From Octopus bimaculoides (lineage: Eukaryota), in the NCBI RefSeq assembly GCF_001194135.2, contig NC_068984.1, positions 74,922,133-74,986,132 on the forward strand: 64,000 nucleotides of DNA, in the 5' to 3' direction. Shown here piece by piece: positions 189 to 30,023 of the stretch. Numbering within the stretch: position 1 is the first letter of the stretch; every line of letters starts with the position of its first letter. The position numbers were made by a program, and so were the translations under genes. The notes under the pieces were generated by a model. That model had not been told where the DNA came from. It saw only the letters and a list, made by a program, of their open reading frames with translations, and ran no database searches.

Positions 189-230
189 TTCGTTCCAGCG
201 ATACAGCTTTTATCCCTGCAGCCACCAAAA
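189..230 (+). CDS. Micro-exon A (42 nt, phase 1-1): [14 protein letters not shown]
   Basis: Acceptor ttttcttttccttttaccactttcag, donor gtaagt at 231. Confidence 0.75.
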
Positions 231-658
231 GTAAGTTGGTAAACATACATATATATGTATACGTGTGTGTATGTGTGCGTAAATTGATGCTTAAAATCAA
301 ATTTCACTAGAAATTATTTCACGTGTTCATCAAAGAATCCATTTTATGCTATTTAATGTAGTGGTTGCAACGAAAATTACAAAAGACAAACAAAATTTTG
401 AGAAACAGACTCAGTATTCATAGGCAACATATACGAGATCCTAATACTAGACAGATTGCTCTAGGTGAACATTTAAACTTATGAGTAACAAAAAATCACC
501 GAAATTCCTTCTCACTTAACTTTTGTTCTGTGAAAAACAAGATCAAATACACACACTCACACACACACTCACACACACACACAACACACACACACATATA
601 TATATATATTATATATATACATAGATACACGCACACACACATACATATACACATACAT

Positions 659-692
<34 letters not shown>

Positions 693-971
693 CAACCAAG
701 CAGCATGCGGATTGGTCAAAACCGTATTCCAAAACTTTAGGTTGCTGGAGCGTTCTAAGAGGTACTGCAGTTGTCAAGAACTCAACTGTCAATTAAATAC
801 ATTTTGAAACATGACGATTACTCCGAACGTATGGAGGCGCTAATCGATCTTTATGTACATTACAAAATATTCTTTTAATGTTAAAATTCAATGATAAAAA
901 AGGTGAAAACCAGGCCATGTTTTAACGTTATTCAACCGATATAATATTCTATACACATTCACACAAATTCA

Positions 972-1026
<55 letters not shown>

Positions 1027-4000
1027 CNNNNNNNNNNNNNNNNNNNNNNNNNNNNNNNNNNNNNNNNNNNNNNNNNNNNNNNNNNNNNNNNNNNNNNNNN
1101 NNNNNNNNNNNNNNNNNNNNNNNNNNNNNNNNNNNNNNNNNNNNNNNNNNNNNNNNNNNNNNNNNNNNNNNNNNNNNNNNNNNNNNNNNNNNNNNNNNNN
1201 NNNNNNNNNNNNNNNNNNNNNNNNNNNNNNNNNNNNNNNNNNNNNNNNNNNNNNNNNNNNNNNNNNNNNNNNNNNNNNNNNNNNNNNNNNNNNNNNNNNN
1301 NNNNNNNNNNNNNNNNNNNNNNNNNNNNNNNNNNNNNNNNNNNNNNNNNNNNNNNNNNNNNNNNNNNNNNNNNNNNNNNNNNNNNNNNNNNNNNNNNNNN
1401 NNNNNNNNNNNNNNNNNNNNNNNNNNNNNNNNNNNNNNNNNNNNNNNNNNNNNNNNNNNNNNNNNNNNNNNNNNNNNNNNNNNNNNNNNNNNNNNNNNNN
1501 NNNNNNNNNNNNNNNNNNNNNNNNNNNNNNNNNNNNNNNNNNNNNNNNNNNNNNNNNNNNNNNNNNNNNNNNNNNNNNNNNNNNNNNNNNNNNNNNNNNN
1601 NNNNNNNNNNNNNNNNNNNNNNNNNNNNNNNNNNNNNNNNNNNNNNNNNNNNNNNNNNNNNNNNNNNNNNNNNNNNNNNNNNNNNNNNNNNNNNNNNNNN
1701 NNNNNNNNNNNNNNNNNNNNNNNNNNNNNNNNNNNNNNNNNNNNNNNNNNNNNNNNNNNNNNNNNNNNNNNNNNNNNNNNNNNNNNNNNNNNNNNNNNNN
1801 NNNNNNNNNNNNNNNNNNNNNNNNNNNNNNNNNNNNNNNNNNNNNNNNNNNNNNNNNNNNNNNNNNNNNNNNNNNNNNNNNNNNNNNNNNNNNNNNNNNN
1901 NNNNNNNNGCTGCATGCGGATTGGTCAAAACCGTATTCCAAAACTTTAGCTTGTTGGAGCGTTCTAATAGCTACTACAGTTGTCAAGAACTCAACTGTCA
2001 ATTAAATACATTTTGAAACTTGATGATTACTCCGAACGTATGGAGGCGCTAATTGATCTTTATGTACATTACAAAATATTCTTTTAATGTTAAAATGCCA
2101 TAATAAAAAATGTGAAAACCAGGCCATGTTTTAACTTTATTCAACTGATATATTATTCTATACACATTCACACACATTCAGAAATTATATATATATATAT
2201 ACATATGCACATGTATATATATACACACACACACACATACACACATATATCATCTTCTTCCAGCTTTTTACGCATCTTAAATAAAAAGGAGAAATGGCCT
2301 TGACTTTGTAAGGATTGTGCCGAAGAGAACTGTCTTTTAAGATGACATGGTTACATTCCTCCAATTCTCGATGCAAACTTAATGTCAGCTGGGTTGACGA
2401 AAGCAGCAGCCAATTGTACATTGATATCTATATTTTATTGACGTACGTTTACTCATAGTAAGGAGAAGCCTTAAACTCAATGCAAACAAAGCTTGTTACA
2501 TATCTTTTGCAAGATTTGTAAGATATGCTCAATTTAATCGGCAAGATATCTTACGAAGTTAAAATCATATACATCACATGACGCTTTAGGTGTATGGTTG
2601 AATGTATATGTATGTATTAGATGTTTGGTTGAATGTATATGTATGTATTTCGGAGAGAGTGTTTGGTAATTAAGACAAAAACATTTAAGTGTTTGGCTGG
2701 ATGATGAATCACATCGTCACTCTCTCCAGATATTATCCGGCAAAATGTGTTTAATGTATTTAAACAAATGCAACGGAAAGAAGTTGAAGCACTCAGCCAA
2801 ACGTTTGCTGCGGATCTTTTTTAAAACGGGGGCCACATTTTTCATTAACGAAACACTTTGAAACTTGGAACACTGGTAGAATGTGTCATATAAAACATCT
2901 TTTTCTCTTAGTCTTCTTTTAAAAAAAAGAAATCCCTAAGTTATTCCATGTTAAAGTTGTCGTATTTCTGTAATTTCAACCAATCACTGACGTCCATTCC
3001 GCCCATATACATTAAGTGCCGACTACATAAACAAACGATTCTGAAACAATTCTATCGGTGATAGGGTTAGGGTTAGGGTTAGGGTAAAACAGCAAATTTA
3101 AAAAGACAAAAGAAAAACGAAGCTATGGAAATTAAATACGCTTTACACCGCTTAATCAGCCAAAGGAGTAAATGTAAACAACTGAATACTTGTCAGTGAT
3201 TGGTTAAAATTATCGAAATAAGACAATTTTTTACATGAAATAAATTCGAATCCAAAAATATTTTTCTGTTCTATAACACAAAATAGATAAGTATACGAAG
3301 TTTGAAAGTCTTTCGGTACCAAAAACACTACGTAAAACATTAATGAAAAATGTGGCCCCCATTTTAAAAAAGATCCTTTGCTGCTACTTGTGAATAGTTT
3401 GGAATATTCATGAAACAGTATAGATATTCATGAAACAGTACAATTTTCATATAATTCGGATTTCGAAGGGTATCTCTATATATAAGAATCGGAATTTCTA
3501 GCACAACTGGAAGACGTTATAGAAAAAAGGTAAATATTCAAGGCATTGATCAAACACAGCCTACAGAAGACACTTTCCAGAAATAACGCACAGTAGAACA
3601 CAGGACCACATCACTATGACGTTACTTTCATCACTACTCGAGCATATCTGGTAATTTATATTGTCAATAGTAACTGAATAGTTTAAGGTACGTGGAGGCG
3701 CAATGAACCAGTGGTTAGGGCAGCGGACTCGCGGTCATAGGATCGCGGTTTCGATTCCCAGACCGGGCATTGTGAGTGTTTATTGAGCGAAAACACCTAA
3801 AGCCCCACGAGGCTCCGGCAGTGGATGGTGGCGAACCCTGCTGTACTCTTTCACCACAACTTTATCTCACTCTTTCTTCCTGTTTCTGTTGTGCCTGTAA
3901 TTCAAAGGGTCAGCTTTGTCACACTGTGTCACGCTGAATATCCCCGAGAACTACGTTAAGGGTACACGTGTCTGTGGAGTGCTCAGCCACTTGCACGCTA

Positions 4001-4785
4001 ATTTCACGAGCAGATTGTTCCGTTGATCGGATCAACTCGAACCCTCGACGTCGTAAGCGACGGAGTGCCAACGACGACGACGAATTTAAGGTACATCTTT
4101 TTGTACCCTCATAGTTTCATAGTCTCAATTCTATATGGCCTCTGCATCTTCAAGAACATCAAGATTATTTTCTTCGTGTAGCCAATTCTAATCTTGATTT
4201 CTGGTGTAGACAAAACTATTCCTGTTTGTGTAAGCTAAAAGTTAATACGCAAAATATCTATGCTTTGTAAGGTAATGATTAATATTGATTTCTAGCATTT
4301 ACAAAATATTCTTATATTTGTAAGACAATAATTCATACTGAATTATAAAATATACAAAAGATTCATCTCATTCTAAGCTAATATTGATTCAAAAGAAAGA
4401 AAAAAATGTTGTTTAAGGCAATGATCCGTAATGATGAACGAAAGGCCGCAATTTTTTGTTCGGAATACAATCGAATTAATCAAGAGCCTGAATTCTTTGA
4501 AATTAAAATGTACAGTGACCTGGCAGCTCTATGGTTTCTATCTCTCAAAGTCATCAAAGAAATACTTTATATAAATTATTATAAATTGTATTTATTCTCT
4601 GAAGTGACTTAAGCTATTTCCTCCAATTCTAGATTCTTTCAAAGGTGAAGTTGATACTGTTGCAGCTGAAAGCGGTAAGTCCTTTGATATACATGTCTGT
4701 GTGTGCGTATGTGTGTGTGTGCGCGCGCGCACGAGGGTGCGCGTGGGTAAGCGTGGGTAAGCGTAGGTGTGTGGTGTGCGTGTGC

Positions 4786-4827
<42 letters not shown>

Positions 4828-7800
4828 TATGTGCGTGTGTGTGTGTGTGCATGCGTGCGCGTGCATGTGCAAGTATGCATGTATTTATGGATGGATGGAT
4901 GCATGTATGGGTGGATGGATGGATGGATGGATGGATGGATGGATGGATGGATGGATGGATGGATGGATGTTGTATGTATGTCTGTGAACTTCAAATTATC
5001 GTGACTGAGATGTGAATAAGACCATGTCCTGAAAAAACAACCGATAGTTACATGCGCAGATAGAACAGTATTTCGATGACTCAACAAACCTTTAGCATTT
5101 CCAAAAGCAATGACACTCCACGGTTCATAATTCAAAATGAAATGCATCCTTTTTTTCTTTTAATAGACATAAATGTTTTGCATTACCGTGTAAGCAATTT
5201 GTTACACTAAGATTTTTATCTCTACGCATTCAGAAAAGCACTACGAATTGACTATTCTACAAATCAATCTATTTAATTATTGCCATGTTGTTGAGTAACA
5301 TGTTCAAAATACATATTTCTTATATCCGCTAAAAGTAACTTTCATTGAATTGTTATACAATAGTCATAACATATAGTTCTTTATGGAAAGGAAAACCAGA
5401 ATCTTAATGTTAAACCAACACTCTGGTCTAATATCGATAATTGTAATGGCGAAATCTTTTTCATCCACTAAGCATCATTGCGCCTTAGAGTTCAGTATTA
5501 TTCTGGTATCTAGATCCCTAATTTCAGTGAATTCTCTTTTGAAATGCAATACTTTCAAAAGAAGAAATTTAGAGATATATACATAGACGTCTACAATATT
5601 GAATTGACTCAAACCGCAGAATGATTAGATTCCAATGTCGTGAAACTATTTAAAAACGGCAGCACTGATGCTCCATTGTAATTTACAGGATAAAAGTTTG
5701 ACGAATATCATTGTTGACCATTCCCAGTTTACTGTTGAAGTTGTTGATTTTAAGAGACAGGAACTTATAAAGAGTATATCTTTCTTCATGTAAAGGCTGA
5801 TTGCATAGATATTACCCGACCTGCACACACATGCACGCGTGTGCATACATACGCGCGCGCGCGCAAACACAGACAGATACAGATACACATATGAAAGCGC
5901 GTGGCCTAGTAGTTAGATTATAAAGATGGAACAACCAACATAGTTTCTGAGAATGGACAGGTACAATTTTTTCTAGATGAAGAAGGGCACTGTAACGGAT
6001 GAAGTAGGTATTTTCTTGGCAAATAATGAGATAAGGTAGTTATAAGTAAGTGGTAGAATAATTAAGCTTAGAATAGTCATAAACAACATGACTTTGAAAT
6101 ATATGCTACAATCAGAATTGACAGATGAACAAAAGGGCCGCTTTTGTGAGGTCTTCTTTCAGAATATCTTGATCATGCATGATAACGAATACATTACTAT
6201 GGTTGAGGATTTTCATGGACATGTTGGGAAACACCATGATAGTTAGGTACTTCGACATGTATGAAGTCTATAGAAATGGAACGAGGAATACGAAGAATCA
6301 AGTCGGAGTTTTGTGTCGCAAACTGCTAAATCATTTTCAAATTAACTCCAGAAAAATAACCAGCCATCCGATCGCGTGCTACTCTGTTTCTGTGTGCCAA
6401 ACAGTCTTCGTCGTTACTAAGAAATGATACAGAATATATAGAGGATTGGGAATAATGCGTCTTTTCTTGGTGAAGAATGTACTGCTCAACATAGATTAGT
6501 GAATTCGGAGTTCAGAGTACAGACACTTCGGAATCTTGGCGTAAGAAAGTATGGAAACAGAAACATCCTTCTGCTAAACATAGGCTCTGAGAGGTTCTAA
6601 GTGAAGCGTATAGCAAAAACGGAGGTAGAGATAGGGACTAAAAGCATAGAGATAGAGAACAACTAAGAGTATTCTCGAGACACGCTACATCCGGGCACTG
6701 ATATATCCACGATTGGAACAAGATACAAACTGTGATCTAATTGGATGCCAGATTTAATCCATTGCTCGGTTTAGTTTAACACCATCACCTGATACTTTGG
6801 CTGCCTTTAACATAATCCATTCTGTGGCAAGCATTCGAGCCAGGATTCCTGTTTAAGGATACCTTCTTTCCTCCCATCTTCCCATCAGTATCAGAGGACT
6901 TTTAAGAGTCCTCCCTACTGACTAAAAGATGAAAAAATAAAAACAACTATCTTCATTTTCAGAATTAACTTGTTTTATTTCTTCCATTTCTAGGTATTAC
7001 CAACACTTCTGGAGCAGCAAAAACAGAGAGTAAGTTAATGTTTTATCTATACTTTTCATTCAAAATCATGATCTTAATTACCTTATATTAACAAAAGATG
7101 ACCTTATCGTAAAGATACCGATAGTTACGCCATTAGACACGAATGTTTTTGTTCTTCAACGACTCTTTCACTGTTTCCTGAGATCAAGACATTCTACAAT
7201 GCTTTCCATGTACGTAGCCATCTTTCTAGAGAGATAACAGTTGCCTGTTTCTTACAAACGCTGAAATTATTTCTGATTGAGAAGTTACAACGCGGTAACA
7301 TGTCGTTCATTATGTGAAGCAGAGATCGGAGTTGATGGTAAATGGAAGTCTCATATTGATCATTGGGTGAATGTCTCAAGAGTCATTGTGAGGTTAATTA
7401 ATTATTATACTGGCGTAAAACTTCAGAATAATGCATTCGTTCTCTAGCTCTACTTAGTTCTAACTATGTAATCTTTTCTGCTCTAGATGCAAGGCCTGAA
7501 ATTTAGGGGCGAGGATAAGTCGATTATATAAACCCCAGTGCTCAACTGGTACTTGTTTTATTGACACCAAAGAGGAAAGTCGATATTGGAAGAATTTGAA
7601 CTTAGAACAAATACGCGCGAAATACCACTAAGCATTTTGTTACGCGTGCTAACGATGCTGCCAGCTCGGAGCACCGTTGTATAATCCTTTCTACTATAGA
7701 CACAAGGTCTGAAATTTTTAGGGATGGGACTAGTCGATTACATCGACCCAGTGTTTTACTGGTACTTAATTTTCTAGATGAAGAAGAGCACTGTAACGGA

Positions 7801-9668: not shown

Positions 9669-9738
<70 letters not shown>

Positions 9739-11832: not shown

Positions 11833-11864
<32 letters not shown>

Positions 11865-13250
11865 ACATACATATATATGTATACACGACGAGTTTCGTGT
11901 ACCAAATCCACTCACAAGGCTTTGGTGCACACGAGTTTATAATAAAAACACTTGCCCAAGATATGACACAGTGGGACTGAACTGAAGATCTCATTGTTGT
12001 GTGTGTGTGTGTCTGTGTTTGTCTACCCCACCACTGTTTACAACCGGTATTGGTGTGTTTACGTCTCTGTTACCAGCGGTTCGACAAAAGAGATCGATTG
12101 AATAAGTACCAGGCTTTAAAAAAGTATTAGGATCGATTCATTCGATTAAAAATTCTTCAAGGCGATGCCCCAGCATGGCCACAGTCTAATGACTGAAACA
12201 AGTAAAAGGTAAAAGATAAACACTAACCAATACAGAATTTTCATTCCTTCACATCAATTATGCATACTCAGACAAACAATGAAGAACTAGGTTGAAGGTC
12301 CTGACTCCATCAACTCAGAACTTAATTTTTAGCAGCGTTATCAACAGCAGTAGAATAAAGCAACTCCATCATATTATTGATGCATTTTTTAAAACAAAAG
12401 GGTTATGAATGTCTGAATTTACCACGGAAATTTTTCAGTATTTAAACTCAAACCAGACTTTAATACAAGAAATTTCCTCTAGAACTCAGTTATTAATGCT
12501 AATTTATCGACCAAATTGGCAGAGTTGTTAGAGCATCGGACAAAATGCTTAGTGGCATTTCTTTCCGGCGTTACGTTCTGGTTCAAATTCCGGTGAGATC
12601 GATTTTGTATTTCATCCTTTCCGGGTCGATAAAGTAAGTAGCAGTTGAGTGCTGAAGTTGATGTAATGGACTGGCCTTCTTCTCTAAAAAATTCAGTCCT
12701 TGAGCAGAAAGGAAAAAAAGATTATTGACCTAGCAAAATAAAATAGTGCTGTCTTTTGTGACGTGGCCACGAAACACCAATAGTGACGAATAGGAATTGT
12801 GATTGTAGTATTTTTTTTTTCTCATGACATAAATGGTGCAATTGAAGTAAAATATTTTCAATCAGGAACTGATTCCTTATTGTAGTCATAACTTATTGCA
12901 ATAATATATATTTGTCTACGAAAATATCTGTTTCCGTTAAAGGTTAAAGTCCGTTGGTTCTATTAATTTACTTTTTATAATTTTAATATCCAAAAAGATG
13001 AAATGCAAAATTGATTCCGGTGGAGCAGGAACTCAGAACGTAAAAAGGCTTGCTAAAATAAATAAATAAAATAAAATTGTCCGCTGTATTTATTGTGATA
13101 CTCTACCGATTCTGTTACCATTATTAACGGAATATTTCTTATTTGTTATTATATCTTTGTTTTAACAACTAACTTATAATGTAATTCTTTTTCAATTCTA
13201 GATATAACTGCTGCTGCTGCTGCTGTTTCAGAGGGTAAGTTGATACGCGT

Positions 13251-13295
<45 letters not shown>

Positions 13296-19200: not shown

Positions 19201-21599
19201 TCATCGCTTCATTTGTATTGTCCCTGTATTGTTAATTTCATTCGATTTTTTATATTTTATTTAATTATTAAAAGTCATATTTTATGTAAAATCATACCGA
19301 TTTACTGATCCCATCAGTTGTTCTGTCTATTTCTATGTTTAGCCCCCAGTAGCAATAAAGAAATTGGTATTTCGTCTGTCTTTACGTTCTAAGTTCAAAT
19401 TCCACCGAGGTCGACTTTTCCTTTCATCCTTTCGGGGTCGATAAATTAAGTACCAGTTCCGTCCTGGTGTCGATCTAATCGACCGGCTCCTTCCCAAAAA
19501 ATTTCGGTCCTTGTGCCTAAAGTAGAAAAGATTATCTTATAACTTTTCTTGTCGATTTAGTTGACTGTTCCTTCTCTGTCGTTATACTCAGCCATTGTAC
19601 CTGTGCTAGAAATTATTTGATCATCAAACAAAATTCTGGTATCGAGTGCCCTTACATAAGTCTAAATATTAGGCCTTAAAGTTTGAATTCATTACTACTG
19701 TATTGTCCAAAGAATACTAATTTTGTTCATGATGTTTCTTTTCATATATGGTATGCCAAATTAGAAAGTGAATCCATAAGTGACAAAGACGGTGAGTTTT
19801 TTTATGCATTTCCTTTGTTTATATAACTAAAATAGAAGTATTACAAGTTTAATGGAGACCATGTTTTTCATAATTATACAGGCTCGAGTCAACGAGTATT
19901 TTTGCAAAAGTGCTCCATCTAAAGTGCACCATTGGTGGTTATTTTTTAACCAATGGTTTTACATCAATAGTTTTTATCGGCAGTATTCTATCACTAGCAT
20001 TAAACCTCAATGATGTCTATCAGGCACAGTTAGCCTTTTCCGAAAAGCGGGCTTCATAAGATATACTTCATTATTAGGCGGGCCGCATGAAACATGACTC
20101 ATTATTAGACACATCGCACTGCTAAATTAATTCAAAGTAACTTTTCGTTAGGCGTACCATTCAGAAAATTCTGCGGGTTGCATGTTGCTTATGACTGGTG
20201 TATGTCGACGGTCCCATATTAATGACATTACATCGATGACGTTAGATTGATAGTATTTCATCGACAGTGTTATATCAAAAGTTTTAAGGTCAGTGAAATT
20301 GTATAGATGGTGTTACACATCAGTGGTGTTACACATCAGTGGTGTTACACATCAGTGGTGTTCCATCAATAATGTTACACCATGAGTGTTATATAGTGTT
20401 CTGTTAGTGATATTACATTAACAGTGTTGCGTTATAAAAGGGATGTAGCGTCAATACTGTTACCACAATTATCTTATATCAGTTATATTCTGTGAATGAT
20501 ATTCCATCAAGGAGTTACATCAGTTATGTTACTTCAATCCTGTTCCATAAATAGCGGTCTATTAATGGTGTCATGTATTACAATGACGCTACATTTTTGC
20601 TATTATATCGGCTGCATTCTATCAACAGGGTTACCATGGTTGTGTTACATTAGTTATGTTCCTCGGTAGTGTTAAATCAATGTTGTTAGGCCTTAAATAC
20701 CACATCTGTGGTGTTACATCAGTAGTGTTACATCACTGGCGTTACATCGGTGATGTTAGGTAAGTTGTATTACATCGCTAGAGTTACATATACAAAGTGT
20801 TACATCACGTGTTTACACCAGTAATATTACACCGGCATTGTCACTTCAGTGGTTTTACATTATTACTGTTACATCATTGATGATACATCGGTGTTGTTAC
20901 ATCGACGGTGTTACATCTGTAGTATTGCATCAGTGGTATTAGATAAGTAGTGTTGCATCTTCAGTGTCACAGTGATACTGTCACATCAGTGGTGTTATAT
21001 TAGTAGGGTTACGTTGATAGAGCTACAACAATGGTGTCAGTAGTGTTACATCAGTGTTACATCGCTCGTGTTATTTATTGCAGCAGTGTTATATACGGCG
21101 ATGATACATCAGTGGTATTACATCGGTGCTGTTACATCAATAATGTTACATCAGTATTGTTGTATCCATACTTTTACAGTTGTGTTATATAGTTGGTTTT
21201 TATTTACATCAGTAATGTTATTTCGATCGTGTTACATCAGTAGTGTTACATCAGTAACGCTACATCAGTAATGTGAATTCGGTGTTATTTACATGAGTAA
21301 TGCTACACCGCTGGTATTATCTTTACAGTGTTCCTATTATTATAAAGAATGGAAGAGTTACAACATTCCTCTTAATAAGAATAACATGTTTCTATTATTT
21401 TTCTATTGCAGAAAATGCTTACAAAAACGCAATGCTGTTGAATTTTATCCTGGAGATTTCTAGTAAGCTTTTCCGTTTACAAATATTGCATACACTACTT
21501 CTGGTCATACACATTTATACATACGTATGTATGTATGTATGTATGTATGTATGTATGTATGTATGTATGTGTGTGTGTATGTATGTATGAACAACGTAC

Positions 21600-21633
<34 letters not shown>

Positions 21634-24600
21634 TGATTACATCGACTTCAGTGCTCAACTGGTACTTATTTTAATCGATCTCGAAAGGATGAAAGGCAAA
21701 GTCCACCTCGGCAGAATTTGAACTCAGAACGTAAAGACGGAAGAAATGCAGCATTTCGTCCGGCGTACTAAAGATTCTGCCAGCTCGCTGCCTTTGATGT
21801 CCAGAAATAATAGTTAGGAACAAATAGAAAACAATAATATTGTTTATTATAAAAAATTTGAAATGGACGAAATATTGNNNNNNNNNNNNNNNNNNNNNNN
21901 NNNNNNNNNNNNNNNNNNNNNNNNNNNNNNNNNNNNNNNNNNNNNNNNNNNNNNNNNNNNNNNNNNNNNNNNNNNNNNNNNNNNNNNNNNNNNNNNNNNN
22001 NNNNNNNNNNNNNNNNNNNNNNNNNNNNNNNNNNNNNNNNNNNNNNNNNNNNNNNNNNNNNNNNNNNNNNNNNNNNNNNNNNNNNNNNNNNNNNNNNNNN
22101 NNNNNNNNNNNNNNNNNNNNNNNNNNNNNNNNNNNNNNNNNNNNNNNNNNNNNNNNNNNNNNNNNNNNNNNNNNNNNNNNNNNNNNNNNNNNNNNTGGCA
22201 GAATCATTAGCAAGCTGGGCAAATACTTAACAGCATTTCCTACGTTCTGAGTTCAAATTCCGCCGAGTTTGACTTTGCCTTTCATCCTTTGGATTCGATA
22301 AAATGGATACCATCTGAACACTGGGGTCGATGTATTTCTGGACACAAATTTTATGGATCATAAGTCACGCAGCTTGAGCATAAATTTAACTTCTTTTATT
22401 TTTCTTTAAGATGTATTGACAGTATCAATGCAGCAGGTCCGAATCTGGCATTGAAAGTGAAAAAGCTTCCCATGTTTATGAATCAAGCCATCAATCACAG
22501 CAATTTAGGGATCGTAGCTTGATCCTTTGCATTCAGGATCAAGAATGACCGCGAGGCCTCTGGCGAGGACGTGTCAACCGTGGTCAAGAGGAAAGAAACA
22601 TTAAACATTCTCGAGGGTTCCTTGTCGCGGGAGGACTGAGATAGTCTACCTGCTGTAGGACATCTCCCACAAATAGACAAGGGCATCGCTGCATCAGAAG
22701 GAGGTGGGATCCATTATCAAATGTATGGTATACAAGAACATTAGATACGAATTCTACGTGATTAGGAGAGGAGAGGAGAAGTTCATATTCAGCAAAATCC
22801 GGAAGAATCGGTTGATCCCCGACATTATGAGGTCTCCTTAGATGCCAAGGAGTCGCTAGAGCATGATAAGTGGAATGAGAGATACCATTTGATTTAACAT
22901 GCAGCTGCTTCCATGGCTGCATCTTCGCCACTGTTGAGGATAAGGACAATTTTATTTATTGGTTTCCTTCCTTTATACATATATATATATCGTGGAGGCG
23001 CAATGGCCCAATGGTTAGGGCAGCGGACTCGCGGTCATAGGATCGCGGTTTCGATTCCCAGACCGGGCGTTGTGAGTGTTTATTGAGCGAAAACACCTAA
23101 AGCTCCACGAGGCTCCGGCAGGGGATGGTGGCGAACCACAACTTTCTCTCACTCTTACTTTCTGTTTCTGTTGCGCCTGTAATTCAAAGGGTCAGCCTTC
23201 TCCCACTGTGTCACGCTGAATATCCCGAGAACTACGTTAAGGGTACACGTGTCTGTGGAGTGCTCAGTCACTTGCACGTTAATTTCACGAGCAGGCTGTT
23301 CCGTTGATCGGATCAACTGGAACCTTCGTCGTCGTAAGCGACGGGGTGCCAACAACAACAACATATATATCAAGAGAAAAACGAAGTGGGTTCACAAACA
23401 TTCTGTTTCTCGCCAGTAATTTACATAAGTCTTTCTCCAATTCTGATGATCGTAAGGTCGTGGTTTCGATTCCTGGACAGGACGACACTATGTATTCTTG
23501 TGCAAAACATTTCATTTCACGTTGCTTCAATCCACTCAATTGGCAAAAATAAATAACCCTGCAACGGACCGACGTCCCATCCATGTGGGGAATATGTACG
23601 CCATGGAAACCGTGAAACCGGTTCTATGAGTCTATGTGGGGGAATATGTACGCCATGGAAACCGTGAAACCGGTTCTATGAGTCTATGTGGGGGAATATG
23701 TACGCCATGGAAACCGTGAAAGCGGTTCTGTGAGTCTATGTGACTCGGGAAGGAACTTTACTTTTTTACTTTTTCTCCAACGAAACAAGAAAAGGAAGAA
23801 AATTCACTTCTATCAATAAGCTTTATCCACAAGGATAAACTATCATTTTCTCAAATACAGTTATGTGGTAGACAATTTTTTGCTTTCAACCTCAAAGTTC
23901 CTAAAGAATTCAGCTTTGTTTTTGTTCTTTTTCCGTTTTTGTTTGTTGTTTATCTGGATATAATATTTTAGTCGAGTTTCGTTCCCTCCTCCCCCCTCTC
24001 TCTCTCTCTTGTTTTAATTCTCGTTTTATTTCTATTTGCAGATTCTTGTGCGGATTCGTGTGACTTAACTCGAGAAAGTAATTCAGTTGATTTAATTTTG
24101 TTGTTGTTGTTTTCTACTTTCTTTCTTTTCTTTTTTAGTTATATAATTAATATTTTGTTTATTAAATTTTTAACATACTATAATGTCACGAATTTAAAGA
24201 AATAAGTGTAGTCTCGATCATATCGATCTTTGTACATAAATTGTAGTTATTTTATTAAGTAAAAAGGCAAAGTTAATCTCGGAGTGATTCGAACTTAAAA
24301 CTTAAAGGGACGTAAGTAAATGCGCAAGACACCAAATCCGTCGCCACAGATTGCTCATATCTGTTTACTGGTTAGAGATTAGTGTGTGTGGTGGATTAAC
24401 AGAGTCCTTACAGCATTAGACAAAGTATCTTGCTGAAACAATTCGAATCCTGCCTAGGTAAACTTTGCTTTTCATCACTTCCGGAGTCGATAAAATACAG
24501 TAATAGCTCAAGCAAAAGAGAACGGCTGAGAATCCAGAACGAATCTTCTTAACACAGTTCGAGACTTGAGCATGGATGAGGTATAGAAATCCTTAACATC

Positions 24601-27600
24601 CGTAGTATCTCTAGAAGAAACCACTAGCGTAGCTAGGATAGTGGACGAGGGGGAGGTCCACACTTTTATAGGGGCGGTATTTTTTGATCTGCTGTTTAAA
24701 CCTGTATAGGTATGAGGGCCCGAGGTTGCTCGGCAAACTCACGGACCGTCCCGAGCAGCACACTTTTTAGCCACCTCACTGGAAGAAGCTATACGCATTG
24801 TTTTCTCAAGACATCCAAACCTGGTAAGATCAAGGGTGTATGTATTCATCTTCAAGCTATAAGTAGAAAAAATAACAAAGACAAAGACTGAGTTTTAGAG
24901 ACCTGATCTATATCTCAGAAAAAGGTCCATGAGTAGCGGTTAATGCGAAGCCCAGAGAGAGTGGCAGGTGGGGCATAATATGGTTGATGAGAGGAGGAGA
25001 AACTAATAAATCAAGAGTACTTTAACTAGATCAGAAGTGCAGAGACAATTGTGGTAACAGTAGAAAAAGCAAAGAAAAGAGATTATATCTATTGATTTGA
25101 GATTTAAGTGTTGTTGACCAGTTCATGTCAATTAGTCGGGTGACCTTTTTGTTGATGCGACAAGTATATATGCACGTACGGACGAGCGGACCGATAGATG
25201 GATGGATGGATAAACGTGTAGTGGCAACACCATCGATGTCGTAGAACTTCTTTGCGAGCTTTATACAGGGTTGGTAGATGTTGGGACCGAAGTATTTCCT
25301 GGCCCTAAAGCAGCCTGTCTTTGTGATGCAGTCGTTGCTATGCTGATGTACAATATGCTATGCTTGTGTACAATAACCAGATGTCTTCAATGGTAGTGAC
25401 CTTGAATGTTCTATTAGTGACCTCGAAGGGTCTAGATGTGTATTGCTCATGTACAGCACTCTTCGTATGCCTGTGTTGTTGAAGGAATCAAAATTAGTAT
25501 GATTCTATTGGAAGATGTTGTTTGAGGTCACTATTTATGGAATCAGTGCAGCTTTAGCGTGAAGTGTCTTGGCTGCACGAGGGTAATGCTTGGTCGGGGA
25601 GTATTAGGGACAAGTGAAGGATGGTATAGTTAGCATAAAAAAGAACATTTTGAGTGGATAGCAGTTAGGTTTTTGATAGGTTGTAGATGGCAAAACTAAA
25701 CTTTAGGGACAACAAAGTTGACAGAATACGGGTGAAAAGAGTTCTATCTGCGTGCATCACGATGATGCTGTCAAAAAGGAAACCTTGATAAAAGAGATAA
25801 AGAGTAGCATTGCAAGGGTCTTGTGTTTGTGGTATCTCTGGGCAAGACACTTTATTTTATACGATGTATTATACATTATGTAGTTAGTAATAATAATCTG
25901 CGGTACCATTCATTTAAGGGAGACTGTATCAAATATATCTTACATCAACCTGTTCTAATACTACTGGAATCAGATTTAAGTACCGCTTCTAAATCATTCC
26001 TGAAATGATTAACTCTAGAATTTTAATAGTTAAAGTAATCTGGTTAACAGATCCGATCTAATTTATTTTATTCTGACCTTAATAAGTCATCGTTGTCATT
26101 ATGGGGATTTGAACATTAGTCCTCTATCTTGGCGATTCACTGTCCTTGCGATTTCATGGGATATAGCACTTTTAATATATATGATCGAATACCTTATTCC
26201 ACCTGGGTGGTATTTGAACCCAGGAATCAAGGGATATCGAATTCGATTACAGTAAATTAAATCGTCTGTTTATTTAAACATACATGGATTTTTAATGTTT
26301 CTGCCCCCGTTTTTGTTTTCTTTCATAGCGGAATGTGAAGATAAAGAATGCATGGAAAAAGAAAAACGTAAGTACCTCTACCTATACTGTTATATATCTA
26401 TACATTATTCACTTCCTTTATATATGTACATCTTTTTATACTGATCATATGACTGTACATTATGCCTAGCCTGATATACATACATATACACTAGTTATAC
26501 AACTGTTCTTTATTGACTTGAGGTGTGTAACTTAGTGGATAGAAGTGTTGGACTCTTGATCGTAAGATTGTGGTTTCGATTCCTCGGCCGGGCGATGCGT
26601 TGTGTTCTTCAGCAAAGCACTTCATCTCATGTTCCTCCAGCTTACTCAAATGGTAAAAATAAGTAATCCTGCGACGGAGCAGCGTCCTGTCCAGGAGGAA
26701 TACATGCACCACGGAAACCGAGAAACCGGCTCTATGAGTATGTATGATTCGGAAAGGAGCTTTATCCTTTAGTGTTCGTATATCGATTTAGATTGATTAT
26801 AAAATTGTATTTTGTTTATGTAAGTATATCTATTTATTAAAAAAATAATTAAAGGACCAAAAGTCCTTCTCGAACCATAGTCTCATAAGGCCTGTCTTTC
26901 AGCTTCAGTGACGTTTATATTCCATCCGACTCACTAGACGGGACAGCAGTACGTCCCAGGATTACTCATTTTTACCGGCTGCGTGGGCTGGAGCAACGTG
27001 AAATGAAAAATGTTTTGTTCAAGAACACAACGCATCACCTGGTCTAGAAATCGAAACCATAATATTACGATCGTGAGTGAAACACTCTAACCACTAAGCC
27101 ATGCGCTACCGCATATCTATTCATACTGTTATATAGTTATACTTCATATAACCAAATATAATGATGCCTTATGGTAGTCTCTCGAGTTTGAGAGAGACGG
27201 TTCTGCATTTTTTTTTTTTTTTGCAGAACAATCTGCACTGATGATTTGTTTATAGTGATCAAACGTTTTTGCAGCATATTAGCTCTCTCCCTCTTATCAA
27301 ATCGGCGTTGCCTGTTCACTGCACGGTGTGACACACATCAGATGTCGTAATGATCGCCACAATCTTGCAATCACGAGATCAACACCCAAACTACTAGGCC
27401 ACGTGTCGTGACGATGCCTAATACAAGTATATCTGTTTGGACTGATTATGTAAGCACATCTACTTGTGCGGCCATTGGTCTTGGCTGATCAGCGATCACT
27501 GACTAGCTAGATGGCGTACCGTCTATATGTATAACTAATGTTTGCCAATGAAAATGCACCAAAAAACAAAATTGTTAATGAGATTTCAATATGTCGTTTA

Positions 27601-28471
27601 TCAAAACTGGAACCGAATGAGTCTATTGTAATTTTTTGCTGGTCAACTACTGATAAAAGAAAAAAAAGCAGTTCCCTGTTTGTTTTATCAGAGACTTTCT
27701 GACGCCATCAATCTTCAACGGCATCGTGTTTTATTGTTCAGTTCTTTTTATGTTCGAACACAATGATTCAGGTTCAATTCCGAGGCAATGAGTTGGTGTT
27801 CGGGACTCTGCCAAATATTTTCGCTACAGATATATAACTATAGTTTATTCACTCGTTTTATGAGGATGCATTTTTTTGGACTAATTCTCTGTCAGTAATC
27901 CATTTAGTTGCCTTATACATATTTTAGTTGTCATACGCATATATATTTTAGTCTCGCAGTAAAACCAAGGCTTATAGTTAGACCATGCCTTCATGTAAGT
28001 AAGATGTGCCTGACACAATATGGTTTATTTTAATAAGTCGCTCTCTACATTCAGTAGGTGGAAGAAAGATAAAGAACGAAACCCAATGAGCTGTAAAGAC
28101 GGCAAAACTGGTCGGTTTGAACCTCATTTCAAGCTGCTAAAGATTTCGTTCAATAGTTTGTCTTTCTCTTTAAGCGTAACACTTGAATTTGTTTCATTCT
28201 GTTAAATATATCGATTATCTTCTCCGTAGTTAAGGTAATTGACGGCGTAACCCTCGAACACTTACTGCCAGAAGCAGAATAATATTACTGTCAGAGAACG
28301 CGTATGTTTGTGTATTAGAAATAATTACCCTTGCAAACTTCAACAATAATTTTTTTTTCTTTTTTTTTTTGCTATTATTTCAGTTTGTGCGCAATGCATG
28401 AGAAACCGTAAGTAAAAATAATTGTTAACATCATTTCTAAGGCTATTTAGAAAACACATGGTGTGTGTTTG

Positions 28472-28505
<34 letters not shown>

Positions 28506-28515
28506 NNNNNNNNNN

Positions 28516-28552
<37 letters not shown>

Positions 28553-30023
28553 GCCTTTCAGAGAAATGTACCCTGGATAACAGAAGTTGTAGAGAAAAAG
28601 GAAAACATAAACCTAGCAACAATTGTTAACAAATCTCCAAAGAAAGGGAAGATAATTTCAAAATATAATTTATTTCACAGAAAATTTACTTTTCATGCTT
28701 CTGTGTAGAAAGATAATATCGATATTTCTTGCAGGATTTCATAATAGAAAGAGCAAACATAAAAAAAAATTATAACGGTGCATATATTTTAAACATCATA
28801 TATTGTAATTCATGTATTATAATGAAAGAAGGATTCAGTCTACAAAATTTTAACACTATCCGTAATATATGATTAGGGAAGGGGTAAAATGCAAATTCAA
28901 TACGTGCGTATGTGTGGGTATGCATAAAAATGTGTATGAATATATGCATATTTACCCATGGTGGAGGTGCAATGGCCCTGTGGTTAGGGCAGCGGACTCG
29001 CGGTCAGAGGATCGCAGTTTCGATTCCTAGACCCGGGTGTTGTGAGTGTTCAATGAGCGAAAACTCTTAAAGCTCCACGAAGCTTTGGCAGCGGGTGGTG
29101 GCGGACCCTGCTGTACTCTTTCACCACAACTTTCTTTCACTCTCTCTTCCTGTTTCTGTTGTACCTGTATTTCAAAGGGCCAGCCTTGCCACACTGTGTC
29201 ACGCTGAATCTCACCGAGAACTACGTTAAGAGTACACGTGTCTGTGGAGTGCTCAGCCACTTGCACGTTAATTTCACGAGCAGGCTGTTCCGTTGATCGG
29301 ATCAGCTGGGACCCTCGTTATCGTAACCGACAGGGTGCCGTAGTATTTACCTATATTTGTGGATATATAATACATATATGCACATATATGTAAGTGCATA
29401 TTTATATAATATATATATATATAGATAGATAGATAGATAGATAGATATGCAGGGCAGAGAATCGTCAATTAGTAATAAAATTAATAATTAACAATTTTGC
29501 CGGGTAGCTCAGTATGAAAAAACCTTTTCGGTAAAATCATTTATAATCATAAATATATAGGGATTGACAGTAACCTGCTTCTCCAACATACTGAGAATTC
29601 AGAAATAGCAGCCAAAGAACTACTGATTCCAAAACTACAAATTATTACTCTAAATTGATAGCGATATTTATGATACACACAGAACAAAAAACAGTAGAGA
29701 AGAGTAAAAAAACCACTTGCCTTTAGTTAATTTAGTACGNNNNNNNNNNNNNNNNNNNNNNNNNNNNNNNNNNNNNNNNNNNNNNNNNNNNNNNNNNNNN
29801 NNNNNNNNNNNNNNNNNNNNNNNNNNNNNNNNNNNNNNNNNNNNNNNNNNNNNNNNNNNNNNNNNNNNNNNNNNNNNNNNNNNNNNNNNNNNNNNNNNNN
29901 NNNNNNNNNNNNNNNNNTATATATATATATATGCATGTATGTGTGAATACTTCTCTGTTTTGATTTTATTTTGTTTGTACAGCACAAGAACCTGAATTCA
30001 ACCTAAGGAATTCAACCGGATAA
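189..30023 (+). CDS. Predicted multi-exon micro-exon gene (3' part; 5' end upstream of window), uncharacterised S/T/A-rich plus 6-Cys protein
   Basis: Ten short exons with pyrimidine-tract AG acceptors and GT donors on the nine internal exons join in phase 1 without stops: [123 protein letters not shown] (123 aa). No family recognised. Confidence 0.72.
700..2190 (+). repeat. Direct duplication of at least 280 bp across an assembly gap
   Basis: 700-980 recurs at 1909-2190 with scattered substitutions. Confidence 0.85.
1028..1908. other. Assembly gap (largest of 11 N-runs)
   Basis: Other gaps at about 8018-8200, 8805-9250, 18120-18309, 21878-22195, 28506-28515, 29740-29917, 36518-36594, 51430-51908, 53957-54069, 61671-61680. 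Confidence 0.99.
2812..3376. mobile_element. Non-autonomous DNA transposon (MITE), Merlin-like, with internal (TTAGGG)4
   Basis: 37-bp TIRs (2812-2848 and 3340-3376, 1 mismatch) starting GG; 8-bp TSD tttgctgc (2804-2811, 3377-3384); telomere-type repeat at 3062-3085. Confidence 0.8.
3692..4084 (+). mobile_element. tRNA-head SINE, family A (full length)
   Basis: tRNA-like A/B boxes (tggttagggc...ggtttcgattccc), 10-bp TSD tttaaggtac (3682-3691, 4085-4094). Close copies at about 22992-23362 and 28961-29342, decayed copy at about 50782-51105, reverse partial copy at about 54615-54815. Confidence 0.85.
4633..4674 (+). CDS. Micro-exon B (42 nt; in-frame alternative acceptor at 4645 gives 30 nt): [14 protein letters not shown]
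   Basis: Acceptor tatttcctccaattctag, donor gtaagt at 4675. Second AG (ttctttcaaag) is 12 nt downstream in the same phase. Confidence 0.75.
4700..4980. repeat. Compound microsatellite (GT)n/(GGAT)n, representative of many
   Basis: Direct reading. Similar tracts at 545-690, 8205-8315 (GTT/CTT), 9660-9735 (ATT), 21525-21635 (GTAT), 41760-41820 (TAG/CAG), 58040-58115 (AAT). Confidence 0.95.
5925..6650 (+). mobile_element. Decayed RTE-type LINE fragment (APE endonuclease)
   Basis: Broken motifs [14 protein letters not shown] (GDFNGHVG-like), [20 protein letters not shown]. Confidence 0.65.
6994..7029 (+). CDS. Micro-exon C (36 nt): [12 protein letters not shown]
   Basis: Acceptor tgttttatttcttccatttctag, donor gtaagt at 7030; contains NTS sequon. 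Confidence 0.78.
9800..11735 (-). mobile_element. 5'-truncated, decayed Penelope-like element (RT plus GIY-YIG)
   Basis: Reverse-strand motifs LTMGS, GLYRDD (11586-11603), [17 protein letters not shown] (from about 11466), [19 protein letters not shown]...[18 protein letters not shown]...CDFCAEE. Confidence 0.85.
13202..13234 (+). CDS. Micro-exon D (33 nt): [11 protein letters not shown]
   Basis: Acceptor attctttttcaattctag, donor gtaagt at 13235; (GCT)5 encodes poly-Ala. Confidence 0.75.
15567..15608 (+). pseudogene. Micro-exon E (42 nt), probably crippled: [14 protein letters not shown]
   Basis: Open in phase 1-1 and similar to exons A/B/D, but acceptor reads taattctAC instead of AG and donor is gttgag. 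Confidence 0.45.
15838..19364 (+). mobile_element. Tx1-clade LINE, ORF2 with stops and frameshifts
   Basis: APE (CVNVCGL, ATETR, LLGDFN, YLDRI, DHKMV, GYWKL); RT ([46 protein letters not shown]); C-terminal HAIVQC knuckle remnant; gap at 18120-18309. Confidence 0.88.
19765..19791 (+). CDS. Micro-exon F (27 nt): ESESISDKD
   Basis: Donor gtgagt at 19792; nearest AG (ccaaattag) lies about 20 nt after a tttcttttc tract, so the acceptor is weaker than the others. Confidence 0.6.
20309..21320 (+). repeat. Degenerate minisatellite, 14-16 bp unit gtgttac(ac)atcagtg
   Basis: Three perfect 16-bp units at about 20309-20358, then dozens of diverged gttacatcag-type units. Confidence 0.8.
21412..21462 (+). 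CDS. Micro-exon G (51 nt): [17 protein letters not shown]
   Basis: Acceptor tttctattatttttctattgcag, donor gtaagc at 21463. Confidence 0.7.
23584..23742 (+). repeat. 52-bp unit triplicated near the 3' end of a tRNA-head SINE (about 23450-23765)
   Basis: aatatgtacgccatggaaaccgtgaaa recurs at 23591, 23643 and 23695. Confidence 0.9.
24042..24077 (+). CDS. Micro-exon H (36 nt): [12 protein letters not shown]
   Basis: Acceptor tctcgttttatttctatttgcag, donor gtaatt at 24078; C-x3-C. Confidence 0.72.
24500..25850 (-). mobile_element. Heavily decayed retroelement, possibly Penelope-like RT
   Basis: GC-richer stretch; reverse reading TILATL...DVKDFYTS resembles RT motif A (DVxSLYT). No other motif recovered. 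Confidence 0.35.
26329..26367 (+). CDS. Micro-exon I (39 nt): [13 protein letters not shown]
   Basis: Acceptor tttttgttttctttcatag, donor gtaagt at 26368; C-x4-C. Confidence 0.78.
28384..28407 (+). CDS. Micro-exon J (24 nt): LCAQCMRN
   Basis: Long T-tract then gctattatttcag acceptor, donor gtaagt at 28408; C-x2-C. Confidence 0.75.
29983..30023 (+). CDS. Predicted terminal coding exon K: [13 protein letters not shown]
   Basis: Acceptor ttttattttgtttgtacag; phase-1 reading ends at TAA 30021-30023. A gap at 29740-29917 could hide another exon. Confidence 0.65.

What the first reader, a model, noticed from the sequence alone, without database searches (positions are those of the whole stretch)
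189..30023. Hidden micro-exon gene: nine symmetric phase-1 exons of 24-51 nt spread over 30 kb
Seen: nine internal exons (42, 42, 36, 33, 27, 51, 36, 39, 24 nt), each with a pyrimidine-tract AG acceptor and a GTAAG/GTGAG/GTAAT donor. All are multiples of 3, all are stop-free in the same phase, and they join to a terminal exon to give a coherent 123-aa stretch: S/T/A/acidic stalk, then a short hydrophobic segment, then a 6-Cys module. The naive chance of nine 3n lengths is 1/3^9 (about 5e-5), but I picked exons by eye, two acceptors had alternatives, and one 23-nt counter-example exists (5167-5189), so the true odds are weaker. Established: runs of tiny symmetric exons define Schistosoma MEGs and are used in tropoelastin and CD44-type stalks, where any subset can be skipped in frame. 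Inference: a lineage-specific secreted or surface glycoprotein diversified by combinatorial exon skipping (up to 2^9 in-frame subsets in the visible part). I know of no described cephalopod MEG-like system, but I could not search.
Basis: partly seen in the sequence, partly recalled or inferred. Interest (0 to 1): 0.92.

Follow-up and report, generated by a model that had tools for sequence, protein, structure and literature searches.

The report
Probable unannotated micro-exon gene tail
The first 30 kb of the window very probably holds the 3' part of a real protein-coding gene built from tiny in-frame exons, but its function, its expression and any role for exon skipping could not be tested here.

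Summary
Nine + strand exons of 42, 42, 36, 33, 27, 51, 36, 39 and 24 nt, plus a terminal exon (29983-30023), exist as described. They join in phase 1 to a stop-free 122-aa peptide ending in TAA. No exon touches an assembly gap; all seven gaps are intronic.

An objective splice-site scan of both strands, not picked by eye, ranks seven of the nine exons in the top 17 of 268 candidates. At a fixed threshold, six of seven candidates on the + strand of 1-30 kb are 3n and open in one phase. The rest of the window gives 1 of 9, and 400 simulated sequences gave a mean of 0.68 and a maximum of 3. Exons E (weak acceptor) and G (weak GTAATT donor) are less certain.

The visible product is acidic (pI 4.4) and S/T/A/E-rich. 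It has no transmembrane segment, and its six Cys fall as one CxnC pair in each of three exons.

No homologue was found, but a control showed the protein database lacks this genome and its close relatives. So "hidden", "secreted", "cephalopod" and "combinatorial skipping" remain untested. The strong consensus splice sites argue for constitutive inclusion. The architecture resembles flatworm micro-exon genes; membership is not shown.

The parts
189..230 (+). Micro-exon A, 42 nt, encodes [13 protein letters not shown]. Acceptor ...ccactttcag, donor AAA|GTAAGT. In-frame alternative acceptors lie at 207 and 222, and an out-of-frame one at 199.
   Evidence: Matrix rank 3 of 268. Open in all three frames, so its phase is inferred from its length only. 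The upstream partner exon lies outside the window.
4633..4674 (+). Micro-exon B, 42 nt, encodes (N)[13 protein letters not shown]. Acceptor ccaattctag, donor GCG|GTAAGT.
   Evidence: Rank 10. Frame 1 is closed.
6994..7029 (+). Micro-exon C, 36 nt, encodes (G)[11 protein letters not shown], with the NTS sequon. TTAAC branch-point motif at -26. Donor AGA|GTAAGT.
   Evidence: Rank 7. Its donor 9-mer is identical to that of the TMTC-like TPR exon.
13202..13234 (+). Micro-exon D, 33 nt, encodes (N)[10 protein letters not shown], with the NIT sequon. CTAAC branch-point motif at -30. Donor AGG|GTAAGT.
   Evidence: Rank 8. Its start and end resemble exon C (IT...E), and the acceptor context is shared with B and C.
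19765..19791 (+). Micro-exon E, 27 nt, encodes (E)SESISDKD. Least certain exon. Strong donor ACG|GTGAGT (6.9) but no proximal pyrimidine tract (acceptor -5.0). It is the first AG downstream of a distal T-rich tract and a CTAAT motif at -45.
   Evidence: Only frame 2 is open, but for 27 nt that is weak evidence.
21412..21462 (+). Micro-exon F, 51 nt, encodes (E)[16 protein letters not shown], an amphipathic segment that is not a membrane span. Acceptor ctattgcag, donor CTA|GTAAGC.
   Evidence: Rank 13. Kyte-Doolittle result.
24042..24077 (+). Micro-exon G, 36 nt, encodes (N)[11 protein letters not shown], the first Cys pair (Cx3C). Good acceptor (6.5), weak donor AAA|GTAATT (-1.6).
   Evidence: Only frame 2 is open. 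It fits the pattern of one Cys pair per exon seen in H and I.
26329..26367 (+). Micro-exon H, 39 nt, encodes (T)[12 protein letters not shown], the second Cys pair (Cx4C). 79% purine. Contains TGCATG. Donor AAC|GTAAGT.
   Evidence: Rank 6.
28384..28407 (+). Micro-exon I, 24 nt, encodes (L)CAQCMRN, the third Cys pair (Cx2C). Long T-tract acceptor. Donor ACC|GTAAGT. Contains TGCATG.
   Evidence: Rank 17.
29983..30023 (+). Coding part of terminal exon K, encodes (P)[12 protein letters not shown] then TAA. Acceptor ttttgattttattttgtttgtacag (score 5.0). The 3' UTR presumably runs on; the first ATTAAA is at 30382 and the first AATAAA at 31371.
   Evidence: The acceptor lies 65 nt after gap 29740-29917, so its linkage to exon I rests on scaffolding.
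5167..5189 (+). 23-nt candidate in intron B-C with strong sites (rank 2 of 268). It is not 3n. Inclusion would shift the frame and reach a stop in exon D, so it is either a decoy or a poison exon.
   Evidence: Frame consequence read directly from the sequences.

Best explanation
Window 189-30023 (+ strand) is the 3' part of a spliced protein-coding gene whose start lies upstream of the window. At least seven and probably nine consecutive exons are phase-1 symmetric micro-exons of 24-51 nt, separated by introns of 1.6-6.5 kb full of SINE and LINE debris. A short terminal coding exon follows.

How the exons are recognised (inferred from anatomy): each tiny exon carries a donor with full complementarity to U1 snRNA (GTAAGT in six of nine). 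Most also have a pyrimidine tract with YAG and a YTRAY branch motif 25-47 nt upstream, and several are purine-rich. I think most of these exons are included constitutively. The two with one weak site (E and G) are the likeliest cassettes.

The visible product (shown from sequence) is 122 aa, acidic (pI 4.4, net charge -11) and has no membrane span. It comprises a 59-aa S/T/A/E-rich low-complexity segment with two N-x-S/T sequons, a 17-aa amphipathic segment, and a 46-aa C-terminal module. The six cysteines of that module are delivered as one CxnC pair per exon (Cx3C, Cx4C, Cx2C).

Function (inferred, weakly): a lineage-restricted secreted or lumenal acidic glycoprotein with a small disulfide-bonded, or metal-binding, C-terminal module.
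For: - Exons, lengths, frames and the joined ORF.
- Enrichment by rules not picked by eye: one search found 6 loci with GTAAGT donors on the + strand of 1-30 kb, all 3n and phase-1 open, against 1 locus in the other roughly 98 kb of strand. One search placed 7 of 9 exons in the top 17 of 268. One search gave 6 in one phase, against a simulated mean of 0.68 and maximum of 3, with real-sequence controls at 1 of 9.
- Positive control for the signals: the top-scoring acceptor in the window is the true last-exon acceptor of the TMTC-like gene on the - strand. That gene's TPR exon uses AGA|GTAAGT, as exon C does.
- Branch motifs and purine content.
- Exons lie in unique sequence, and none overlaps the interspersed repeats.
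- It is a separate transcription unit. The TMTC-like coding sequence ends at 38414 on the opposite strand, 8.4 kb away and convergent.
- Composition, sequons, Cys positions and the absence of a transmembrane segment.
Against: - There is no transcript, protein or cross-species evidence of any kind.
- The searches that could have given it came back empty. A control shows the protein database does not hold this genome or close relatives, so this is absence of evidence rather than evidence of absence.
- E and G each have one poor splice site.
- Exon A is open in all frames, and its upstream partner is unseen.
- Contig order across seven gaps is by scaffolding only.
- The splice matrix uses generic metazoan frequencies written from memory, not trained on this genome.
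- The secreted reading rests on phase-1 symmetry, sequons and even Cys numbers. No signal peptide is visible.
Confidence: 0.72

Rival explanations
1. The gene is a MEG-like diversity generator: the symmetric exons are skipped in many combinations to give a ladder of secreted or surface glycoprotein isoforms.
For: - All nine exons are 3n and in phase 1.
- No exon ends in T, so none of the possible skip junctions creates a stop.
- Each Cys exon carries exactly two Cys, so skipping keeps the Cys number even.
- E and G have one weak site each.
- Flatworm MEGs with this architecture do make isoforms this way (PMC10526429).
Against: - No isoform data exist.
- Seven exons have strong consensus sites, which is typical of constitutive inclusion.
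- Symmetry is equally found in constitutively spliced genes.
- No signal peptide is visible, and the visible part has no membrane anchor.
Confidence: 0.2
2. Real gene, different biology. The micro-exons encode the disordered acidic tail of a larger, possibly conserved, intracellular protein, and the CxnC pairs bind zinc or another metal rather than forming disulfides.
For: - The acidic S/T/E-rich composition, with [12 protein letters not shown]-type stretches, is common in intracellular disordered regions.
- Three closely spaced CxnC pairs could form a small metal site.
- The 5' part of the gene is outside the window, so nothing excludes a conserved N-terminal domain.
Against: - Runs of phase-1 symmetric exons are, from established exon-shuffling statistics, mostly extracellular.
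- Three N-x-S/T sequons are present.
- There is no match to any solved structure.
Confidence: 0.2
3. Chance. These are pseudo-exons picked by eye in ordinary non-coding DNA.
For:
- Strong non-3n decoys exist, such as 5167-5189 at rank 2.
- E and G are weak.
- There is no external support.
Against: - Objective scans reproduce the cluster and its shared phase.
- Simulations never exceeded 3 where 6 are seen.
- Real-sequence controls give 1 of 9 against 6 of 7.
- The joined frame is open over 122 codons while the two other frames carry several stops each.
Confidence: 0.05
4. A relic. The region is a once-functional micro-exon gene that is no longer expressed, or that is disrupted in the unseen 5' part or in a gap.
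For: - Introns are heavily invaded by repeats, including a sense-strand LINE reverse-transcriptase fragment in intron D-E.
- The 5' part is unseen.
Against: - All ten visible exons keep intact splice dinucleotides and an unbroken frame.
- Repeats avoid the exons.
Confidence: 0.08

Closest known systems
Flatworm micro-exon genes (Schistosoma mansoni MEGs; also reported in tapeworms)
   Same: - Most of the coding sequence is carried by a run of very short exons whose lengths are multiples of three, separated by much longer introns.
- Automatic annotation of such genes is hard.
- In-frame skipping is possible.
- The product is small and largely disordered.
(MEG features from PMC10526429.)
   Different: - Exons here are 24-51 nt, whereas MEG exons range from 6 to 81 bp and are mostly 15 bp.
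- Introns here are 1.6-6.5 kb, against 0.1-5 kb.
- The product is acidic, against the hydrophobic 'sticky' MEG proteins with Pro/Phe/Leu motifs and basic C-termini.
- No signal peptide is visible.
- No sequence relationship could be shown.
- The host genome is not a flatworm genome as far as its content suggests, though the organism is unverified.
- Any likeness would be convergent architecture, not family membership.
Vertebrate tropoelastin and CD44-type variable regions (from general knowledge, not tested here)
   Same: - Consecutive exons are all in the same phase, so any subset can be removed in frame.
- The exons encode low-complexity or stalk-like sequence.
   Different: - Those exons are mostly larger.
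- Elastin alternates hydrophobic and cross-linking exons.
- CD44 has a transmembrane anchor and a hyaluronan-binding domain.
- Neither has one Cys pair per exon.
Fast skeletal troponin T 5' mini-exons (from general knowledge)
   Same: A run of tiny in-frame exons encodes an acidic, variable segment. It is the classical case of combinatorial mini-exon use.
   Different: It is an intracellular muscle protein of a conserved family. Its exons are 12-18 nt, and it has no Cys module.
Neural microexons in conserved genes (SRRM3/4-dependent programme; studied across bilaterians including Octopus bimaculoides, bioRxiv 10.64898/2026.09.05.749416)
   Same: Very short in-frame exons that need special recognition signals.
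   Different: - Those are single exons, usually 27 nt or shorter, inserted into otherwise ordinary conserved genes.
- Here the whole visible coding sequence is made of micro-exons, and only two of them are 27 nt or shorter.
- A UGC just before the AG is seen only at F and G.

Membership tests
Micro-exon gene (MEG) architecture class | Most of the coding sequence is carried by many very short exons (6-81 bp) | tested here: met
   330 of the 369 visible coding nt lie in nine exons of 24-51 nt. The range definition is from PMC10526429.
Micro-exon gene (MEG) architecture class | Exon lengths are multiples of three (symmetric exons) | tested here: met
   9 of 9 internal exons are 3n and all are in phase 1. 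This holds under objective selection for 6-7 of them.
Micro-exon gene (MEG) architecture class | Short exons interspersed with much longer introns | tested here: met
   Introns are 1575-6530 nt. Gap lengths are only estimates. Intron A-B is probably overestimated, because a 328-nt duplicate flanks gap 1028-1908.
Micro-exon gene (MEG) architecture class | N-terminal signal peptide; secreted product | not testable with these tools
   The 5' end of the gene is upstream of window position 1. The sequence could not be extended.
Micro-exon gene (MEG) architecture class | Isoforms produced by differential use of the micro-exons | not testable with these tools
   No transcript data are accessible. Only the permissive property was shown: no junction creates a stop.
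Schistosoma MEG protein families (homology) | Sequence relationship or shared motifs (hydrophobic FL..F motif after the signal peptide, Pro/Phe/Leu-rich, basic C-terminus) | tested here: not met
   The visible product is acidic (pI 4.4), rich in Ala/Glu/Ser/Thr, and lacks these motifs (motifs from PMC10526429). No database hit was found, although that database is uninformative for animals.
SRRM4-type neural microexons | Isolated exons of 3-27 nt in conserved genes, with a UGC motif next to the 3' splice site | tested here: not met
   Only E (27 nt) and I (24 nt) are 27 nt or shorter. TGCAG acceptors occur at F and G only. Here the micro-exons make up the whole visible coding sequence.
Membrane-anchored stalk glycoprotein (CD44 or mucin type) | Transmembrane segment after the stalk | tested here: not met
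   The maximum Kyte-Doolittle 19-residue mean is 0.83. The hydrophobic stretch [10 protein letters not shown] is 10 residues long and contains N and E.

The most novel reading that the evidence does not exclude
It would be a secreted acidic glycoprotein whose stalk and whose three two-cysteine C-terminal units are each separate phase-1 micro-exons, shuffled by combinatorial in-frame skipping into many isoforms. The gene would also have been missed by standard annotation.
Probability: 0.12. Interest if true: 0.75.

Novelty: new variant of a known kind. Interest (0 to 1): 0.5.

Why it matters
Genes made almost wholly of symmetric micro-exons are described as a class essentially only in parasitic flatworms. 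My literature searches found none in cephalopods or other molluscs.

A verified case in an unrelated animal would show that this architecture arises convergently. It would also show that gene finders systematically miss such genes, and it would give a tractable model for how very short exons are recognised and whether they are used combinatorially.

If the gene proves to be constitutively spliced, it is a curiosity of gene structure and an annotation fix.

Tried and rejected
1. Protein homology. The joined 122-aa peptide against 5.8 billion proteins gave no hit at E<=10. A control with the conserved TMTC-like TPR exon gave a best hit of only 65% identity, ENA or Logan sources only, and 7 hits in all. 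The database therefore lacks this genome, its relatives and most animal proteins, and the negative says nothing.
2. The exhaustive HMMER library refuses spliced sequences. Structure prediction has the same restriction on its input, and no single exon reaches its 30-aa minimum, so I did not try it.
3. Solved structures gave no match at E<=10. A likeness in flavour to the small acidic six-Cys mollusc pheromone attractin, recalled from memory, was considered. I dropped it because the Cys spacing differs and the PDB search found nothing.
4. Metagenome contigs. Six back-translated peptide patterns gave 141 raw matches, none confirmed. An exact 38-mer spanning exon A and its donor gave no match. So there are no orthologues and no way to extend upstream.
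5. Synteny. Two long ENA contigs carrying TMTC-like exons (L001, L002) show nothing like the micro-exon peptide within +/-10 kb. They are distant, and the flank is too short to reach beyond the TMTC gene.
6. Paralogous exons in the window: none. Exon flanks match only microsatellites. Alignment of B, C, D and E with their flanks shows shared acceptor and branch contexts but no convincing duplication.
7. Literature. The peptide strings occur in no paper. 'Micro-exon gene' or 'microexon' combined with cephalopod, octopus or mollusc gave nothing relevant.
8. Rfam and tRNA scans of the window were empty.
9. Rbfox-type TGCATG enrichment near the exons: not seen, apart from one copy inside each of H and I.
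10. The organism could not be identified with the tools available.

Full report
**What is there**

The window is AT-rich (about 37% G+C), repeat-laden eukaryotic DNA with eleven assembly gaps.

| Exon | Coordinates | Length |
|---|---|---|
| A | 189-230 | 42 nt |
| B | 4633-4674 | 42 nt |
| C | 6994-7029 | 36 nt |
| D | 13202-13234 | 33 nt |
| E | 19765-19791 | 27 nt |
| F | 21412-21462 | 51 nt |
| G | 24042-24077 | 36 nt |
| H | 26329-26367 | 39 nt |
| I | 28384-28407 | 24 nt |
| K (terminal coding exon) | 29983-30023 | 41 nt including TAA |

Joined and read in frame 2, so that every intron is phase 1, they give this peptide: [122 protein letters not shown]. That is 122 residues plus a stop. 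The two other frames carry several stops each.

**Gaps first**

None of the ten exons touches a gap.
- Six gaps were listed by the scan program. A seventh, at 29740-29917, was not listed. All seven lie inside introns.
- The reading frame is carried by the exons alone, so wrong gap lengths cannot break it.
- Three caveats remain. About 2.2 kb of intron is unread and could hide roughly one more exon. The order and orientation of the eight contigs is by scaffolding only. The terminal exon's acceptor lies just 65 nt after a gap.
- Gap 1028-1908 is flanked on both sides by 328-nt direct copies, 700-1027 and 1909-2236, at 91% identity. This looks like an uncollapsed haplotype, so intron A-B is probably about 1.2 kb shorter than drawn.

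**Is it more than chance?**

*Rule 1.* At least 14 of 20 pyrimidines, then AG, then 18-60 nt, then GTAAGT. This gives six independent loci on the + strand of 1-30 kb. All six are 3n and all are open in phase 1. It gives one locus, of 29 nt, in the remaining roughly 98 kb of strand.

*Rule 2.* A generic metazoan donor and acceptor weight matrix, with frequencies written from memory and not trained on this genome.
- At a fixed threshold, the + strand of 1-30.1 kb holds 7 candidates, of which 6 are 3n and all 6 share one open phase.
- The + strand of 30-64 kb holds 4 candidates (one 3n). The whole - strand holds 5 (none 3n).
- 400 first-order Markov simulations of the region gave a mean of 0.68 and never more than 3. 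A Poisson tail from that mean is about 1e-4 or less.

*Positive control.* The highest acceptor score in the window belongs to the true last-exon acceptor of a conserved TMTC-like gene on the - strand. That gene's TPR exon ends in AGA|GTAAGT, the same nine bases as exon C.

*Further support.* Most acceptors have a YTRAY branch motif 25-47 nt upstream, including a perfect CTAAC for D and TTAAC for C. The exons sit in unique sequence, and none overlaps the many interspersed repeats.

I conclude that the run of symmetric micro-exons is real for A, B, C, D, F, H and I. E and G are probable but weaker.
- E has a strong GTGAGT donor but no proximal pyrimidine tract. It is, however, the first AG after a distal T-rich tract.
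- G has a good acceptor but a weak GTAATT donor. Its Cx3C content matches the pattern of one Cys pair per exon seen in H and I.

**Surroundings**

- The gene is a separate unit. A TMTC-like gene (TPR repeats) runs on the - strand, with exons near 62744-62610, 43456-43127 and 41960-41853 and a last exon at 38596-38414. The two genes converge, with 8.4 kb between their stop codons.
- Candidate polyadenylation signals follow exon K from 30382 (ATTAAA) and 31371 (AATAAA).
- Intron D-E holds a sense-strand LINE reverse-transcriptase fragment at 16.5-18.95 kb. It matches the LINE-1 ORF2p reverse-transcriptase domain at E=7e-9, which explains the local G+C peak.
- The start of the gene lies upstream of the window and could not be reached.

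**What the product looks like**

These features come:
- It is acidic: pI 4.4, net charge -11.
- Residues 1-59 are low-complexity Ala/Ser/Thr/Glu/Asp with the sequons NTS and NIT.
- Residues 60-76 ([16 protein letters not shown]) are amphipathic, not a membrane span. The maximum 19-residue hydropathy is 0.83.
- Residues 77-122 hold six Cys, spaced C-x3-C-x7-C-x4-C-x6-C-x2-C, with exactly one pair in each of exons G, H and I. A further NST sequon follows.
- There are no dibasic processing sites.
- No exon ends in T, so no exon-exon junction, in any skipping combination, can create a stop codon.

**Mechanism, with what is shown and what is inferred**

*Shown:*
- the exon-intron anatomy;
- the shared phase;
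- the open joined frame;
- the signal strength relative to controls.

*Inferred:* these short exons are recognised through unusually strong sites: full U1 complementarity at six of nine donors, plus good branch and pyrimidine signals and purine-rich exon bodies (79% in H, 70% in E). From this I expect most of them to be constitutive. If it occurs, E and G are the first candidates.

*Weakly inferred:* a secreted or lumenal location. This rests on phase-1 symmetric exons, sequons and an even number of Cys per module. An intracellular acidic tail with a small metal site is a live rival.

**Comparison with what is known**

The nearest described class is the flatworm micro-exon genes. These have 10-20 exons of 6-81 bp, mostly 15 bp and mostly multiples of three. 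Their introns run to about 5 kb, they carry an N-terminal signal peptide, and they yield many spliced isoforms (PMC10526429).
- The architectural criteria I could test are met.
- The signal peptide and isoform criteria cannot be tested.
- The protein-level motifs of schistosome MEGs are not met, since this product is acidic and Ala/Glu/Ser/Thr-rich.
- So it works like, or at least is built like, a MEG, but it is not shown to be a member of that family. Any likeness would be convergent.
- It is unlike single neural microexons in conserved genes. It is also unlike transmembrane stalk proteins, since it has no membrane span.
- My literature searches found no MEG-like gene reported in cephalopods or other molluscs. 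The peptide strings occur in no paper.

**What could not be done**

- Homology searches were empty. The TMTC control proves the big protein database lacks this genome and its relatives.
- Two distant TMTC-bearing contigs showed no syntenic counterpart within reach.
- The organism was not identified. 'Cephalopod' and 'hidden' are unverified.

**Verdict**

It is most likely (about 0.7) the 3' part of a genuine, lineage-restricted protein-coding gene built from phase-1 micro-exons. The diversification-by-skipping story is possible (about 0.2) but unsupported. This is a moderately interesting structural find that a single RNA-seq alignment would settle.

Noticed in passing
window 38414-62744, - strand: Exons of a conserved TMTC-like gene (TPR repeats; the best database relative is 65% identical). 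Exons lie near 62744-62610, 43456-43127 and 41960-41853, and the last coding exon is 38596-38414, with its stop at 38416-38414. It is convergent with the micro-exon gene and served as the positive control for splice signals.
   Followed up: partly
window 16519-18953, + strand (intron D-E): Broken non-LTR (LINE) reverse-transcriptase ORFs in sense orientation, interrupted by gap 18120-18309. They match the human LINE-1 ORF2p reverse-transcriptase domain at E=7e-9, and they account for the 47.6% G+C peak at 16-18 kb.
   Followed up: partly
window 53903-54370, - strand: A second retroelement fragment (ORF with ...LRVKGRLYDACVRTTMLHGSETWAVT..., the typical C-terminal part of a LINE reverse transcriptase), interrupted by gap 53957-54069.
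   Followed up: no
window 700-1027 and 1909-2236: Two direct copies of 328 nt, 91% identical, abut gap 1028-1908 exactly on both sides. This is probably an uncollapsed heterozygous overlap, i.e. an assembly artefact. The gap and one copy may not exist, which would shorten intron A-B by about 1.2 kb.
   Followed up: partly
window 29740-29917: A 178-N assembly gap inside the finding's range that the scan program's list omitted. It ends 65 nt upstream of the terminal exon's acceptor.
   Followed up: yes
window, e.g. 7469-7970, 14800-15240, 21628-21812, 33337-33583, 41444-41730, 52724-52977, 61002-61238, 62904-63350: A family, or several families, of 150-450-nt SINE-like interspersed repeats with up to about 20 matching copies in the window. 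Many share a ...GTCGATAAAATAAGTACCAGT...GTCGATGTAATC... core, which yields spurious AG...GTAAT 'exons' on both strands. None overlaps the micro-exons.
   Followed up: partly
window 28943-29339: A repeat whose 5' end looks tRNA-derived (ggtggaggtgcaatggccctgtggttagggcagcggactcgcggtcagaggatcgcagtttcgattcc...). ARAGORN calls no tRNA and Rfam gives no hit. Probably a tRNA-derived SINE in intron I-K.
   Followed up: partly
window 5167-5189, + strand: A 23-nt candidate exon with one of the best site scores in the window (rank 2 of 268), lying between exons B and C. Inclusion would shift the frame and stop in exon D. It is either a decoy or a possible poison exon.
   Followed up: partly
window 26329-26367 and 28384-28407: Exons H and I each contain the hexamer TGCATG (an Rbfox-type motif) at their Cys-Met codons (GAATGCATGG and CAATGCATGA). 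This may mark common ancestry of the two Cys-pair exons or an exonic regulatory site. No enrichment was seen in the flanking introns.
   Followed up: partly
window 4680-5150: (TG)n and (GGATGGAT)n-type microsatellites directly downstream of exon B generate long spurious ORFs on both strands (119 and 172 aa). Similar TA/TG runs border most assembly gaps.
   Followed up: no
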